DNA of 64,000 nt, from positions 468,863 through 532,862 of the forward strand of contig NIVC01000083.1 in the NCBI GenBank assembly GCA_002269645.1, read 5' to 3'. The first letter of the stretch is position 1; the number at the start of each line of letters is the position of its first letter. Source of the DNA: Macrostomum lignano. Taxonomy: Eukaryota. This document shows positions 36,495 to 43,200 of this stretch, piece by piece. The position numbers and the translations under genes are program-made. The notes below the pieces were generated by a model that worked only from the letters and a program-made list of their open reading frames with translations, did no database searches and was not told the origin of the DNA.

Positions 36495-39400
36495 TCAACC
36501 GCTGCCAGCATCTCCTCCGCCCATCGCCAGCAGCCTGTCCAGCTTCTGGCTGACTGAGCTCAACTCCGAGTGCTGCGACTCAAGATAGTCGCGCAGATCC
36601 GACTGAACTTGGCGCAGTTCGCCAACCCGACGCAGCAGCAGAACGCCTTCGCTGCTGAGTTCGCTCTCGTCTGCCTGAAAGCCGTCCAGCTTGCGTCGCA
36701 GCCGGCGCAGCATCACAGCTTGATAAAACAGGTAAAATAGGTAGACAAAATTGTGGAAATTTTGACGCTTAACCTCGGAATCGTTGATGTTCAGGTGCTG
36801 CTTTATTATGTCCAGCGGCTGCTGCTGCCGCTGATCCGCTTCAGGCACCTGAGAGCAGCGGCGGCGCGACAGTCGCATGATTTTTGACAGGCACCAGCAG
36901 ATGAGATTTCGCGCCTCCAGAACAATATTAAAAGGTGGCGGCAGAGCTGAACGCTTTATGAACTCCTTGTTGAGATCGTAGCGCTCGAACAGCCACATGG
37001 CCTTCGACTCTGAGTCCACCATGTCGATGGTCTTGCTAAACATGGCAACAATCACGTTGAGTAGCAGAACCTGCACAACAACAATGTAAACCACCATGAG
37101 CACGTAGGGCACCAGGACGCTGCCAGGAAATGACACGCATTTGTCTACGTCATCGACCACCTCGTCTGCGATCTCCTTCTCCTCGGTAGCAGCCGCGCTC
37201 AACAAGCTGCCAGCTGTGGCGTTGATTGAAGCTGCCGTTGCAGCCACGACAGACGCTTTGGAAGCCGAGGGGTCGTGCATCTGACACTCCGTCTCCAACT
37301 CGTCAAGGCCGTACTCACCTGTTTGAAGTTATCACGGAAGGAGTATTTGGTTAGATAATATACCAATATTGATGAGCTGCAGAGGGCAGAAACGAGCCAG
37401 AAACGGCGTGTTAGTTTGTTTCTGTCCAATGCAGCCTATCCATACGAGAGTTAGCCGGCGAGAAACCGCGTTTTCACGGCCTGCTGAGACTGTCTATGGT
37501 AAAATCCCATTTATTCCAATGCTTTCAGTCGGTTTCAAGACCCACTGAAAATGTCTATGACAAAGTTAGAAGACAGCGGGGTCAAGGGGGCGCTTACTTG
37601 CGCACCAGCACTCTAGAGAGAGAAAGAAAGAAATTTAAGAAATTGTCTATGGCCCAAACTGCTTATTTTGTGAATCGAAAAAATATACCTTTTCAACTTC
37701 GGATTCGTCAAAAGTGAGATCAAATTCGTCAGCGTATGCAAAACTATATAGCGCTCAAGGGGAAGAGAATGAGTGTCTATGGTAGATTTTTAGAGAAAGT
37801 GACTTCGAATTCGTCTAAGTAAGTAAAATTCGTCATTGCAAATACAGCCTGATCAGAAAAAGTGTTTGCTTTGTCCATGGTAAGAAAAGAAGGTGTCTAT
37901 GGTAAATTTAAGTAAGAAAGTGAGTGAAGTTCGTCTGTGGAAAAGTAGCCCAATTTCTTGAAATCTTCATTTCATGCTTTGATTGTTGTCAGCGTTAAGT
38001 GGTATAACATTAACTAAATATTGGTTTTGTCAGCCTAACTGAGAATAAAGCCATCCAAAGTGAGAATCCTGCCTACGCTGACTGCGAAGGGCCTGGCTGC
38101 GTGCAGCCTTAGTCTATGGGCCATAGACTATAAAGGATAAGCAAAGTGATAAAAAGCCATCCAATGTGAGAATCCTGCCTACGCTGAATACAAAGGGCCT
38201 AGCTGCGTCCAGCCTAGTCTATGAGCCATAGACTATAAAGGATAAGCTAGGATTGGCTAGTCATATGGCTCAGAAGCTCAGAAGTTATAAAAATAAAAGA
38301 ATACGACGCATAGACCAATCGATTCTCACATTGGATGGCTTTTTATCACTTTGCTTGTCCTTTATTGTCTATGGCCCATAGACTAAGGCTGCACGCAGCC
38401 AGGCCCTTCGCAGTCAGCGTAGGCAGGATTCTCATTTTGGGTGGCTTTATTCTCAGTTAGGCTGACAAAACCAATACTTATATGCATACGAGTTTTTTAT
38501 TATTGAAGTCGGCCATAGATAACTGCAGCGGTCGGGCTAACTATAACTTGGTATTTGACTTGAATACAAGCATTGAGTGATTGACACTTGGCTGAAGGCT
38601 TAGCTAACTCACCGACAATCGTATAGAAGGTCCGCTTGAACATCTGGATCAGAATGTCCGGCGGGTCGATGTCTATGGCCTTGCCCTTGGCATAGTACTG
38701 GCCATTGGGCCATAGCAGAGCGTGGAAAGCGATACCAAAGCCCAGCATGATGACAATCAGGATGTACAGAAACGGGATGAAGTCTTTCTTGATCATTAGC
38801 GATAGCATTTTGAGCTTGACACCGACAGACTCCAGGACGATGGAGATGAACAGGATGCGGATCCACACGATCAGGGTGGTGATGACGATAAAGACGTAGC
38901 TGAGATCGCGGCTGCGTCTCTCGTGTGTGCCATCGGAAATCAACGCTAGGAAGTCGAATTTTTTCGAACTAATTTGCCGAGAAATAAAGGCTAGAAAGCC
39001 GCAGAGGGTGGCGATGAGGTCGATCACATTCCATCCGTCCGACAGGTAGACGCTGAGAGTCTCCTGCCGGAGGCTGGATATCATTTCGCGAACTTCCTCA
39101 ATAAAGATTCCCAGAATGGTGAAATAGCAGATCAGCTCGATAGGACTGGACGGGCCCTGGAAGTCCGACAGGATCATCACCGACAGCAGGCCAACGAAGG
39201 CGAAGTAGAACAGCACGCTGATGCGGAACTTCACGCACGGGGTGCCGTAGAACTCCAACAGTTCTGTGACGAATTCGCGGCAGGTCATCCGGCCGCCTCC
39301 CGATGCATCCTGTGAGCCATGCTGCTCAGCGCCTCGGCCATCTTTCTCCGAGTCTTCTGTTGAGAGAGTGGATGAGGTTAAGAAAAAAGTTTTAGGTCAA

Positions 39401-42400: not shown

Positions 42401-43200
42401 GATCGGCGCGCCCGGCGGTCAGTAGCAGTTTGAGACAGTCTGAGCAGCTGTACTCAACGCACAGGTGCAACGGCGTTTGACCGTCAGAGTCGGCTTGGGC
42501 GTTCGCATCGGCGCCGTGGTTTAAAAGCAGTTGCAACGCCTTGTGGGGTGAGCAGGACAGGAGCTGGTGAGCTCTGGATTGAGAAGCTTAGCCTGCCTTC
42601 AATGGCGCCCCTCCCCTCAATGAAATGGCGCCCCCAATGAAATGGCATCCCAATGAAATAGCACCCCAATGAAATAGCGCCCCAATGAAATGGCGCCCCA
42701 ATGAAATGGCGCCCCAAATGAGATGGCGCCCCAAAATGAGATGGCGCCCCCAAATGAGATGGCGCCCCAAAATGAGATGGCGCCCCCCAAATGAGATGGC
42801 GCCCCCCAAATGAGATGGCGCCCCCAAATGAGATGGCGCCCCCAAATGAGATGGCGCCCCCAAATGAGATGGCGCCCCTAAATGAGATGGCGCCCCCAAA
42901 TGAGATGGCGCCCCAAAATGAGATGGCGCCCCCAAATGAGATGGCGCCCCAAAATGAGATGGCGCCCCCAAAATTGGATGGCGCCTCGTCAAATGAAAAA
43001 TGAAGATCTCATCAAGCCCGTACATCAAGCAAGAGCAAGACAAGGTTATCTCCTACCTCGGCATCGTTTCGCCTCACTGCCGCGTGCAACAGTCGATGCA
43101 CAGAGTTTCCTGACGCCTGCCCGCCAGACAGCAGTTCCTCTAAGCGGTTCCAGTCGATGCCATCTTCCAAATTGCTGCTGTCCTGACTGTTCGCAGCCAT
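36495..43200 (-). CDS. TRPM-like cation channel with N-terminal ankyrin repeats; 1,176 aa as spliced
   Basis: Exons 43200-43057, 42539-41979, 40814-39557, 39356-38613, 37318-36495; phases 0,0,1,1; total 3,531 nt open. About 5 ANK repeats (LHAAV..LLNHGADAN, GQTPLH, ETPLH, DNPLH, LTCLH); MHR4-like LALWA...DLA...SWYG; S1-S6; pore FYTIVGEYGLDE; S6/TRP helix LLLNVIVAMFSKT...WLFERY; C-terminal coiled coil. Confidence 0.92.
38017..38478. mobile_element. Foldback/MITE with about 160-bp inverted repeats, TA-flanked, in the last TRPM intron
   Basis: Left tattggttttgtcagcctaactgagaataaagcc... mirrors right ...ggctttattctcagttaggctgacaaaaccaata; about 100 bp of the left arm is duplicated internally; TA at 38015-16 and 38479-80. 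Confidence 0.8.
40855..41957. repeat. (AACT)n microsatellite filling TRPM intron 2
   Basis: About 1.1 kb, nearly perfect. Confidence 0.99.
42600..42975. repeat. 18-bp minisatellite in TRPM intron 1
   Basis: Unit caaatgagatggcgcccc. Confidence 0.95.

What the first reader, a model, noticed from the sequence alone, without database searches (positions are those of the whole stretch)
36495..43200. Ankyrin-repeat TRPM channel: ANK repeats replace the SLOG/MHR1-2 domain
Seen: five exons splice in phase into one 1,176-aa ORF. The first ANK repeat is split by intron 1 (LLHAAVRRNDAE|ALQLLLNHGADANAQAD), and the ANK exon joins in phase 0 to MHR3/4-like helices, then S1-S6, a TRP helix and a coiled coil. 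No SLOG fold or NUDT9-H tail is visible. Established: canonical ankyrin repeats belong to TRPA, TRPN, TRPV and TRPC, while TRPM begins with MHR1-2 (SLOG). Inference: a domain-shuffled, possibly lineage-specific channel class with a TRPM pore and an ankyrin sensor or scaffold. Flatworm TRPMs matter pharmacologically because the praziquantel target is a TRPM.
Basis: partly seen in the sequence, partly recalled or inferred. Interest (0 to 1): 0.8.

Follow-up and report, generated by a model that had tools for sequence, protein, structure and literature searches.

The report
Ankyrin-bearing TRPM-like flatworm channel gene
This is a real, intact Macrostomum lignano gene for a TRPM-type cation channel that carries ankyrin repeats where TRPM channels normally have a SLOG domain, but the design is already known from parasitic flatworms as TRPM_MCLZ, the target of the drug meclonazepam.

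Summary
Five GT..AG exons on the minus strand (43200-36495) splice into a 1,176-aa ORF. It matches a GenBank model of a second Macrostomum lignano copy (BOX15_Mlig030258g2) at 99%.

The protein has:
- 5-6 ankyrin repeats
- a helical linker
- TRPM MHR4
- S1-S6
- a WLFERY TRP helix
- long C-terminal helices

It has no SLOG and no NUDT9H, and no SLOG-coding DNA occurs anywhere in the 64-kb window.

The ankyrin-channel junction is not an annotation artefact. A paralogue encodes ANK through S5 in one uninterrupted 911-aa ORF, and a cestode relative sits on an intron-free, transcript-like contig.

The novelty claim fails. The architecture is published for TRPM_MCLZ (Smp_333650) and about 63 orthologues in parasitic flatworms, described as a 'TRPM-like' clade. 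The window protein falls in a 100%-bootstrap clade with trematode and cestode sequences. These carry the published TRPM_MCLZ pocket residues at the published spacing.

Possibly new points:
- The clade reaches a free-living macrostomorph, where it has expanded to about a dozen groups.
- A conserved ANK+SLOG+TRPM subfamily may be an intermediate form.

Likely function: a Ca2+-dependent, divalent-permeable tetrameric cation channel, probably insensitive to meclonazepam.

The parts
36495..43200 (-). Whole gene from ATG to stop: 5 exons, 4 introns, 1,176-aa product
   Evidence: Splicing and translation. Identical exon structure in L001 gives GenBank P0001.
43057..43200 (-). Exon 1 (aa 1-48): N-terminus and first half of ANK repeat 1
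   Evidence: In-frame stop at 43260-43258 upstream. TATAAATA at about 43281-43274 read from the sequence.
41979..42539 (-). Exon 2 (aa 49-235): rest of the ANK repeat domain and start of the linker
   Evidence: Pfam Ank families aa 25-225. AF2 helix pairs aa 31-237.
42000..43101 (-). Ankyrin-repeat domain, aa about 34-228 (5 canonical repeats plus a capping pair), interrupted by intron 1
39557..40814 (-). Exon 3 (aa 236-654 plus 1 nt): helical linker (aa 229-440), MHR4-like domain (aa about 441-625) and start of a disordered loop
   Evidence: PF25508 at aa 438-561. TRPM structures align from aa 445. hhalign is collinear with canonical TRPM from aa about 334 when anchored in MHR4.
38613..39356 (-). 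Exon 4 (aa 655-903): pre-S1, S1-S5 and pore helix, ending in the filter motif IVG
   Evidence: Ion_trans. Alignment to nvTRPM2 and zebrafish TRPM5. AF2 helices.
36495..37318 (-). Exon 5 (aa 903-1176 plus stop): filter EYGLDE, about 60-aa Ala/Ser-rich turret flanked by C914 and C963, S6, TRP helix WLFERY (37031-36954), and two long C-terminal helices (36788-36522)
40855..41957 (.). (TAAC)n microsatellite of about 275 units filling intron 2, which separates the ANK exon from the channel body
42619..42985 (.). 18-bp minisatellite of about 21 copies in intron 1
38015..38480 (.). 160-nt inverted repeat (97% complementary) in intron 4, in a stretch that does not align with the other genomic copy

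Best explanation
The locus is an intact, selectively constrained Macrostomum lignano gene. It is one of about a dozen paralogue groups of the flatworm 'TRPM-like' clade whose parasitic members are known as TRPM_MCLZ. The product is most likely a tetrameric six-TM cation channel with a TRPM body: MHR4, pre-S1, a voltage-sensor-like domain (VSLD), the pore, a TRP helix and C-terminal rib/pole helices. The nucleotide-binding SLOG (MHR1/2) is replaced by 5-6 canonical ankyrin repeats and there is no NUDT9H domain.

Shown: the gene model, the domain content, the absence of SLOG, TRPM homology from aa about 445 to about 1060, and clade membership.

Inferred:
1. Gating depends on Ca2+ bound in the S2-S3 VSLD site. 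E742, E745 (a Q-to-E change), N764, D767 and TRP-helix E1021 correspond to the TRPM2/4/5/8 Ca2+ ligands.
2. The pore passes divalent as well as monovalent cations. The filter V-G-E resembles nvTRPM2 and, from my own knowledge of those sequences, TRPM3/6/7. It differs from the G-Q that I recall for TRPM4/5.
3. The VSLD cavity is a ligand pocket as in Sm.TRPM_MCLZ. Only 3 of the 7 published meclonazepam-contact positions are kept, so this paralogue is probably not meclonazepam-sensitive.
4. The ankyrin domain serves as a cytoplasmic scaffold or partner-binding module in place of SLOG's nucleotide sensing.

The natural stimulus is unknown.
For: Gene model and constraint:
- Gene model.
- Purifying selection between the two genomic copies: dN/dS 0.19, p 8e-5.

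The ANK-channel fusion is real:
- Paralogue L002 encodes ANK, linker, MHR4 and S1-S5 in one 911-aa ORF without introns.
- The Schistocephalus relative sits on a 4.6-kb contig as a single 1,413-aa ORF, whereas genomic models of the same gene are split in three.

TRPM body:
- Every non-ankyrin PDB hit is a TRPM. A profile of the clade core scores nvTRPM2 at 4e-86 and TRPM3 at 6e-78, and all 60 hits shown are TRPM.
- The AF2 model has pLDDT 74 and pTM 0.70, and all 50 top Foldseek hits are TRPM chains aligned over 880-1,200 columns.

No SLOG.

Clade:
- ANK-only proteins form a split with 100/100 NJ bootstrap support, and the M. lignano and neodermatan subclades each have 100.
- Neodermatan members carry H, H, Y, E, R, Y/F and Y. 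The six VSLD positions (S1, S2, S4) lie at exactly the spacing published for Sm.TRPM_MCLZ H827, H831, Y864, E868, R943 and H946; the TRP-helix Y (Y1117) is offset by 10 residues because the pore loop differs in length. The S4 position is Y in trematodes and F in the cestode, as the paper reports.
- The O. viverrini model has two channel domains, matching the reported exon 3a/3b duplication.

Published architecture and function of TRPM_MCLZ: PMC10788528, PMC11731825 and PMC12861061.

Ca2+-site and filter mapping.
Against: - No M. lignano transcript evidence was available, so expression and the exact 5' end are unverified.
- The Sm.TRPM_MCLZ sequence itself was not in my data set. Orthology of the neodermatan subclade to it rests on pocket residues, spacing, the exon duplication and the database names ('TRPM7-like').
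- The window paralogue lacks both S1 histidines (S701, Y705), which the paper calls well or completely conserved among parasite orthologues. Its pocket has therefore diverged.
- The linker aa 226-333 has no detectable TRPM similarity: hhalign without the MHR4 anchor gives E 0.24, and the linker-only model has no Foldseek hit below E 0.4.
- The tree is NJ only and has no TRPS, TRPC or TRPN outgroups. Placement relative to canonical TRPM is unresolved (46% support for a sister relation with flatworm SLOG-bearing TRPMs).
- Ion selectivity and Ca2+ dependence are read from motifs only.
Confidence: 0.85

Rival explanations
1. The 1,176-aa protein is a chimeric gene model. On this reading the ankyrin exons belong to a separate small gene, and the channel starts at exon 3 or has an unseen SLOG-coding 5' exon.
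For: The 1.16-kb intron 2 is filled by a microsatellite and separates the ANK exon from the channel body. No transcript data for M. lignano were available. Older models of this locus differ, for example P0002 at 1,331 aa.
Against: - Paralogue L002 has ANK through S5 in one continuous ORF, collinear across the exon 2/3 junction.
- At least 10 M. lignano paralogue groups and the trematode and cestode relatives share the architecture.
- A cestode transcript-like contig carries the full fusion.
- No SLOG-coding potential exists in the 64 kb. That stretch includes 20.8 kb upstream, which holds another gene (TH1/NELF-C/D) and tandem arrays.
- An in-frame stop lies 20 codons upstream of the ATG.
Confidence: 0.03
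2. It is a member of an ankyrin-bearing TRP family (TRPA, TRPN, TRPC or TRPV) whose pore merely resembles TRPM.
For: It has canonical N-terminal ANK repeats. The ANK region also hits NOMPC in the PDB.
Against: - Every non-ANK PDB hit is a TRPM, with alignments running from MHR4 through the TRP helix.
- The TRPM-specific Pfam domain PF25508 scores above its cut-off in paralogues.
- All 50 top Foldseek hits are TRPM.
- PMC12861061 places TRPM_MCLZ next to TRPM.
Confidence: 0.02
3. The clade is not a derived TRPM. It is an old, separate lineage, sister to TRPM plus TRPS, that kept the ancestral ankyrin repeats and never acquired SLOG.
For: - The midpoint-rooted NJ tree puts the ANK-only clade outside all SLOG-bearing hits.
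- Its sister relation with flatworm TRPMs has only 46% support.
- MHR3 and MHR4 of TRPM are said to hold degenerate ankyrin repeats (Burroughs 2015, cited in PMC13143021).
- Weak ANK-consensus hits fall in MHR3 of two canonical TRPMs.
Against: - Every named member is a flatworm, in a search of 1.84 billion representative proteins.
- Flatworms also have an ANK+SLOG+TRPM subfamily, which could be the source of the architecture through loss of SLOG.
- Long branches and midpoint rooting without outgroups make the outside position unreliable.
- Himmel 2020 infers an ankyrin-free TRPM-TRPS ancestor.
Confidence: 0.08
4. This particular copy is a decaying duplicate in a heavily duplicated genome, with no channel function.
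For: M. lignano carries many near-identical copies. A sister paralogue (L002) shows a frame break before the TRP helix. The window protein has lost both S1 histidines that are conserved in relatives.
Against: - The ORF is intact over 1,176 codons.
- All splice sites are conserved in both copies.
- dN/dS is 0.19, with a significant excess of synonymous changes.
- The pore, S6, TRP box and Ca2+-site residues are intact.
Confidence: 0.05

Closest known systems
TRPM_MCLZ (Schistosoma mansoni Smp_333650) and its orthologues in trematodes, cestodes and monogeneans, the 'TRPM-like' clade
   Same: - N-terminal ankyrin repeats and no MHR1/2 SLOG or NUDT9H.
- TRPM-type VSLD, pore and TRP helix, and similar size (1,176 aa against 1,380 aa).
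- Same clade in my tree (100/100), where the neodermatan members match the published pocket residues and spacing.
- E868, R943 and Y1117 equivalents are kept (E742, R821, Y1016).
   Different: - About 23% identity in the core.
- Five exons, with an intron inside the selectivity filter, against three exons with the whole channel in exon 3.
- H827 to S, H831 to Y, Y864 to I and H946 to F in the drug pocket.
- The filter is IVGEYG, a canonical TRPM G-E, whereas neodermatans have IFEVS.
- The Ca2+-site Q is E in all M. lignano paralogues aligned.
- It belongs to a free-living species, where the clade has expanded to about a dozen groups rather than one gene.
Canonical TRPM channels (nvTRPM2, TRPM3, TRPM4/5, TRPM7 and TRPM8 structures)
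   Same: - MHR4, pre-S1, S1-S6, the TRP box (WKFQRY against WLFERY) and the PPP motif after the TRP helix.
- S2 EExR(Q/E) and S3 WNxxD Ca2+-site residues, and the pore-loop cysteine pair.
- C-terminal long helices.
- PDB profile E-values of 1e-86 to 1e-55.
   Different: No SLOG (MHR1/2). The first about 100 residues after the ANK domain have no detectable MHR3 similarity. There is a 60-aa Ala/Ser-rich turret insertion. There is no NUDT9H and no kinase domain.
Flatworm ANK+SLOG+TRPM subfamily (M. lignano BOX15_Mlig003066 and Mlig025325, Clonorchis sinensis KAG5447154, Schistosoma mekongi KAK4474030)
   Same: Flatworm TRPM-type channels with Pfam-significant ankyrin repeats at the N-terminus.
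   Different: They keep a full LSDAT_euk SLOG domain and a complete PF25508 domain between the ANK repeats and the channel. They group with SLOG-bearing flatworm TRPMs, not with the ANK-only clade.
TRPA1 and NOMPC (TRPN)
   Same: Canonical N-terminal ankyrin repeats in front of a six-TM TRP pore.
   Different: The transmembrane and juxtamembrane regions of the window protein match TRPM only. It has far fewer repeats (5-6, against about 16 in TRPA1 and 29 in NOMPC from my own knowledge).

Membership tests
TRPM (canonical melastatin family) | N-terminal MHR1/2, which is the SLOG domain (Pfam LSDAT_euk) | tested here: not met
   No LSDAT_euk hit. A local SLOG profile built from 84 domains is negative on the protein and on all six frames of the window.
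TRPM (canonical melastatin family) | MHR4 and pre-S1 homology (Pfam PF25508 TRPM2-like domain) | tested here: met
   PF25508 scores 26 bits in this protein (cut-off 27) and 28-46 bits in seven paralogues. PDB TRPM alignments start at aa 445.
TRPM (canonical melastatin family) | MHR3 helical domain between SLOG and MHR4 | tested here: inconclusive
   Linker length is about 210 aa, against about 233 aa in canonical TRPMs. It is collinear from aa about 334 when anchored in MHR4. Alone it is not significant (E 0.24), and the linker-only model has no TRPM fold hit.
TRPM (canonical melastatin family) | Six-TM pore with a TRPM-type TRP box and S6 motif | tested here: met
   WLFERY...NKEF, LLLNVIVAMF and SDGWNVID are aligned to nvTRPM2 and TRPM5.
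TRPM (canonical melastatin family) | C-terminal rib helix and coiled-coil pole | tested here: inconclusive
   AF2 predicts helices at 1080-1114 and 1125-1168, and Foldseek alignments to TRPM cover 880-1,200 columns. There is no Pfam TRPM_tetra hit and no oligomer model.
TRPM (canonical melastatin family) | Phylogenetic position inside TRPM | tested here: inconclusive
   The NJ tree has no outgroups. The clade is distinct (100%), but its position relative to SLOG-bearing TRPMs is unresolved. PMC12861061 places TRPM_MCLZ 'next to' TRPM.
TRPM_MCLZ-like ('TRPM-like') flatworm clade | N-terminal ankyrin repeats with MHR1/2 SLOG absent and no NUDT9H | tested here: met
   Definition taken from PMC11731825 and PMC12861061.
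TRPM_MCLZ-like ('TRPM-like') flatworm clade | Groups with TRPM_MCLZ orthologues in a tree | tested here: met
   The ANK-only clade has 100/100 support and includes O. viverrini, D. dendriticum, F. buski, E. caproni and S. solidus proteins. Their identity as TRPM_MCLZ orthologues is inferred from pocket residues and spacing and from the exon 3 duplication. The S. mansoni sequence itself was not in hand.
TRPM_MCLZ-like ('TRPM-like') flatworm clade | Conserved meclonazepam pocket (H827, H831, Y864, E868, R943, H/Y/F946, Y1117) | tested here: not met
   The window protein has S701, Y705, I738, E742, R821, F824 and Y1016. Three of the six fixed positions are kept, and the variable S4 position is F, as in cestodes.
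TRPM_MCLZ-like ('TRPM-like') flatworm clade | Forms a Ca2+-permeable channel opened by ligands in the VSLD cavity | not testable with these tools
   Needs heterologous expression.
TRPS (soromelastatin) | SLOG and Nudix domains, with a divergent TRP box 2 | tested here: not met
   No SLOG and no NUDIX. Definition taken from PMC7306681.
TRPA / TRPN / TRPC / TRPV | Transmembrane and TRP region most similar to that family | tested here: not met
   All transmembrane-region hits shown in the PDB searches are TRPM: all non-ankyrin hits and all of the best 60. The lower-ranked matches were not listed.

The most novel reading that the evidence does not exclude
The ANK-for-SLOG exchange may predate the parasitic Neodermata and go back at least to the rhabditophoran ancestor. 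On that reading the conserved ANK+SLOG+TRPM paralogues are surviving intermediates, and free-living Macrostomum has diversified the resulting 'TRPM-like' channels into a sensory repertoire of about a dozen groups. More radically, the clade could be a separate ancient TRP lineage that retained ancestral ankyrin repeats. That would contradict the current inference that ankyrin repeats were lost before the TRPM-TRPS split.
Probability: 0.2. Interest if true: 0.55.

Novelty: new member of a known kind. Interest (0 to 1): 0.3.

Why it matters
- TRPM_MCLZ is a validated anthelmintic target whose natural stimulus and ankyrin-domain role are unknown. M. lignano is a free-living, transgenic-tractable flatworm with many paralogues of the same architecture. 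It offers a place to study what these channels sense and what the ankyrin domain does.
- The natural pocket variants seen here (S, Y, I and F at drug-contact positions) add to the structure-activity picture.
- General TRP reviews still state that TRPM and TRPS lack ankyrin repeats. The flatworm ANK-only and ANK+SLOG forms are exceptions, and they bear on how TRP N-termini were exchanged.
- For this scan, the finding is a correct annotation of a known kind of gene and not a discovery of a new class.

Tried and rejected
- The search for homologous proteins with the clade-core alignment and with P0019 timed out three times. The last allowed search returned only one monogenean hit. The taxon range therefore rests on the representative search plus cluster names.
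I replaced it with a local SLOG profile and tblastn, both negative.
- jackhmmer from the linker (aa 226-445) reaches only M. lignano paralogues.
- hhalign of the linker against canonical MHR3, without the MHR4 anchor, is not significant. The linker-only AF2 model has no meaningful Foldseek hit. 'MHR3-like' stays unproven for aa 226-333.
- The supplements of Himmel 2020, Park 2023 and Rohr 2026 are not held. I therefore had no TRPS, TRPC or TRPN outgroup sequences and no Sm.TRPM_MCLZ sequence.
- ARAGORN and Rfam find nothing in 35.0-44.5 kb (ARAGORN 35000-44000, Rfam 35500-44500).
- I rejected identity with TRPM_PZQ. That channel has SLOG and NUDT9H, and M. lignano has its own orthologue.
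Full report
**1. Observation**

On the minus strand, five segments are each bounded by AG and GT: 43200-43057, 42539-41979, 40814-39557, 39356-38613 and 37318-36495. Joined, they give a 3,531-nt ORF of 1,176 codons plus a stop. Intron 2 (phase 0) lies between ...HLFEE and VRRFRHG.... Intron 4 (phase 1) splits codon G903 in the pore motif IVG|EYG.

The organism is the free-living flatworm Macrostomum lignano. 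A second genomic copy (NIVC01000082.1, locus L001) has the same five exons at about 99.3% identity. Those exons translate exactly to the GenBank protein BOX15_Mlig030258g2. The two copies differ by 15 synonymous and 9 non-synonymous changes. That gives dN/dS 0.19 and a binomial p of 8e-5 for the excess of synonymous changes. The frame is therefore under purifying selection.

**2. Domain content**

- Pfam finds Ank_2, Ank, Ank_4 and Ank_5 at aa 25-225.
- It finds the TRPM2-like domain PF25508 at aa 438-561, at 26 bits against a cut-off of 27. Seven paralogues score 28-46 bits.
- It finds Ion_trans at aa 704-1006.
- It finds no LSDAT_euk (SLOG) and no NUDIX.
- Against PDB sequences, the ANK region hits DARPins, ankyrin and NOMPC. 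Residues 445-1042 hit only TRPM channels.
- A profile of the post-linker core of ten clade members scores nvTRPM2 at 4e-86, TRPM3 at 6e-78 and TRPM1, 5, 4, 2, 7 and 8 down to 1e-55. All 60 hits shown are TRPM.
- An AlphaFold2 model built on a 43-sequence alignment has mean pLDDT 74 and pTM 0.70. It shows six helix pairs at aa 31-237, an all-helical cytoplasmic region, six TM helices, a TRP helix (999-1024) and two long C-terminal helices (1080-1114 and 1125-1168).
- All 50 top Foldseek matches in the PDB are TRPM chains, aligned over 880-1,200 columns.

**3. Is a SLOG exon hidden, or is the fusion an artefact?**

A SLOG profile built from 84 SLOG-bearing hits, and tblastn with those 84 domains, find nothing in the six-frame translation of the whole 64-kb window. 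The best E-value is about 1. An in-frame stop lies 20 codons upstream of the ATG. The 6 kb upstream is made of tandem arrays. Beyond it lies another gene on the same strand, a TH1/NELF-C/D homologue.

The decisive evidence for the fusion comes from relatives:
- The 54%-identical paralogue BOX15_Mlig004154g2 (L002) encodes ANK repeats, linker, MHR4 and S1-S5 in one uninterrupted 911-aa ORF. It is collinear across the window's exon 2/3 junction, and it keeps only the intron at IVG|E.
- A Schistocephalus solidus relative of 1,413 aa lies as a single ORF on a 4.6-kb run-assembly contig, whereas the genomic models of the same gene are split into three pieces. That contig is therefore most probably a transcript.

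The 'separate transcript' and 'upstream SLOG exon' refutations both fail.

**4. The family**

An exhaustive HMMER search of 1.84 billion representative proteins, using the ANK-free query (aa 226-1176), gave 1,105 hits. The roughly 20 best hits are ANK-positive and SLOG-negative, or are fragments of such proteins. The later hits are canonical SLOG-bearing TRPMs.

Named members of the ANK-only group:
- about a dozen 50%-identity groups in M. lignano
- the trematodes Opisthorchis viverrini and O. felineus, Dicrocoelium dendriticum, Fasciolopsis buski and Echinostoma caproni
- the cestode S. solidus
- a monogenean fragment from Cichlidogyrus casuarinus, which was not in the tree and is assigned only from its 55% identity to the D. 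dendriticum channel domain

A neighbour-joining tree on 457 columns of the MHR4-TRP core recovers the ANK-only group in 100 of 100 bootstraps. The M. lignano and neodermatan subclades each have 100. Whether the clade is sister to the flatworm SLOG-bearing TRPMs is unresolved (46%). I had no outgroups.

**5. It is already known**

Park et al. (PMC10788528) identified the S. mansoni channel TRPM_MCLZ (Smp_333650, formerly called 'TRPM7-like') as the meclonazepam target. They describe a long N-terminus with multiple ankyrin-like repeats.

Sprague, Rohr and Marchant (PMC11731825) state that it 'lacks the NH2-terminal MHR1/2 or SLOG domain' and instead has ankyrin-repeat modules. The protein is 1,380 aa and the gene has three exons.

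Rohr et al. 2026 (PMC12861061) report the following:
- They list 63 orthologues in trematodes, monogeneans and cestodes.
- They call the group 'TRPM-like' because it clusters next to TRPM.
- They note a duplicated exon 3, encoding the whole channel domain, in Opisthorchis, Clonorchis and Paragonimus.

My neodermatan subclade fits this description on four counts:
- D. dendriticum has H845, H849, Y882, E886, R961 and Y964. The spacings (4, 33, 4, 75, 3) are identical to those of Sm H827, H831, Y864, E868, R943 and H946.
- The variable S4 residue is Y in trematodes and F in the cestode, as published.
- The O. viverrini model contains two tandem channel domains.
- Two members are named 'TRPM7' in the databases.

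The window gene is therefore a free-living-flatworm member of the TRPM_MCLZ-like clade. None of these papers mentions Macrostomum or free-living species for this channel. General TRP literature still says that TRPM and TRPS lack ankyrin repeats.

**6. How far does the TRPM body extend?**

The distance from the end of the ANK domain to the start of the conserved core is 180-240 aa in the clade. The distance from the end of SLOG to the same point in canonical TRPMs has a median of 233 aa. The ankyrin domain therefore sits where MHR1/2 ends.

Profile-profile alignment anchored in MHR4 runs collinearly back to aa about 334, with E 3e-18. Without the anchor it is not significant, at E 0.24. A model of the linker alone has no fold match better than E 0.4. 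MHR4 homology is therefore established. The second half of MHR3 is plausible. Residues 226-333 form a clade-specific helical linker.

**7. Likely mechanism (inferred)**

- *Ca2+ site.* I aligned the protein to zebrafish TRPM5. Its Ca2+ ligands are E768, Q771, N794, D797 and E994, a residue set I know from the literature; PDB entries of Q771A and D797N mutants are consistent with it. The window protein has E742, E745, N764, D767 and E1021 at these positions. All M. lignano paralogues aligned have E at the Q position, while most neodermatan members have Q. A Ca2+-dependent VSLD is likely.
- *Pore.* The filter reads IVGEYGLDE, and nvTRPM2 has the same G-E. From my own knowledge, TRPM3/6/7 also have G-E, and TRPM4/5 have G-Q. 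This suggests divalent permeability. Sm.TRPM_MCLZ was assayed with a Ca2+ reporter.
- *Turret.* A 60-aa Ala/Ser-rich, low-confidence insertion lies between the conserved C914 and C963.
- *Drug pocket.* S701, Y705, I738, E742, R821, F824 and Y1016 keep only three of the six fixed contact residues. F occupies the S4 position that governs potency. This paralogue is therefore probably meclonazepam-insensitive.
- *ANK domain.* With no SLOG and no NUDT9H, gating by nucleotides or ADP-ribose is unlikely. The ANK domain most plausibly acts as a scaffold or partner-binding module.
- The physiological stimulus is unknown.

**8. A second flatworm architecture**

Some flatworm TRPMs carry about three ankyrin repeats (Ank_2 at 33-37 bits, cut-off 27.3) N-terminal to a full SLOG domain. 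These are M. lignano P0018 and P0191, Clonorchis sinensis P0102 and Schistosoma mekongi P0199. In the M. lignano gene, the ANK and SLOG exons are closely spaced, and one exon bridges the two domains. This could be the intermediate from which SLOG was lost, but my tree does not place the two groups together.

**9. Verdict**

The structural interpretation is essentially right. The claim of a new channel class is not, because the class is the published TRPM_MCLZ-like group. What remains modestly new is its presence and expansion in a free-living macrostomorph, the divergent pocket, and the ANK+SLOG forms. I rate it a new member of a known kind, with interest 0.3.

Noticed in passing
window 40855-41957 and 42619-42985: Intron 2 is almost entirely a (TAAC)n microsatellite of about 275 units. 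Intron 1 holds an 18-bp minisatellite of about 21 copies. Array lengths differ between the two genomic copies.
   Followed up: partly
window 38015-38174 / 38321-38480 (intron 4): A 160-nt inverted repeat, 97% complementary, with a 146-nt spacer. The middle of intron 4 does not align with the other genomic copy (L001). This suggests a MITE-like insertion polymorphism.
   Followed up: partly
window 43500-49700: The intergenic DNA upstream of the gene is almost wholly tandem arrays: period 42/124 over 2.3 kb, then periods 31, 30 and 16.
   Followed up: no
window about 49600-54700, minus strand: The upstream neighbour is a TH1/NELF-C/D homologue (Pfam TH1 in the L001 annotation). One of its ORFs runs into a long CLSV/CTG-type low-complexity repeat.
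   Followed up: no
window about 36130-36200, minus strand: A tRNA-like stretch (GGGGGGCCGTAGCCCAGCGGTAGCGCAGC...GGCTCGATTCC) lies just 3' of the gene. ARAGORN and Rfam report nothing, so it may be a tRNA-derived SINE head or a decayed tRNA gene.
   Followed up: partly
L002 12930-13579 (paralogue BOX15_Mlig004154g2): The TRP helix and C-terminus (MWLFERYDLNQEFF...) lie in a different frame from the annotated 985-aa protein's end. This is either a 1-nt frameshift (pseudogene) or an assembly error.
   Followed up: no
P0010 (Opisthorchis viverrini T265_12782, 1,906 aa): The gene model contains two tandem copies of MHR4 plus the channel domain. This matches the duplicated alternative exon 3a/3b reported for Opisthorchis, Clonorchis and Paragonimus TRPM_MCLZ.
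   Followed up: partly
P0018, P0191 (M. lignano; locus L006 6001-10809), P0102 (C. sinensis), P0199 (S. mekongi): A conserved flatworm TRPM subfamily has about three ankyrin repeats N-terminal to a full SLOG domain. I did not find this architecture described explicitly in the papers I read.
   Followed up: partly
P0056 aa 383-453, P0125 aa 422-475: Weak matches to an ankyrin consensus fall inside MHR3 of two canonical SLOG-bearing TRPMs. This is in line with the reported degenerate ankyrin repeats in MHR3.
   Followed up: no
L003 (Logan DRR639838 contig, 1298-4516): An uninterrupted 1,072-aa ANK-only TRPM-like ORF sits on a transcript-like contig from an unidentified organism. In the tree it is sister to the neodermatan TRPM_MCLZ group. 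It could come from another free-living flatworm.
   Followed up: no
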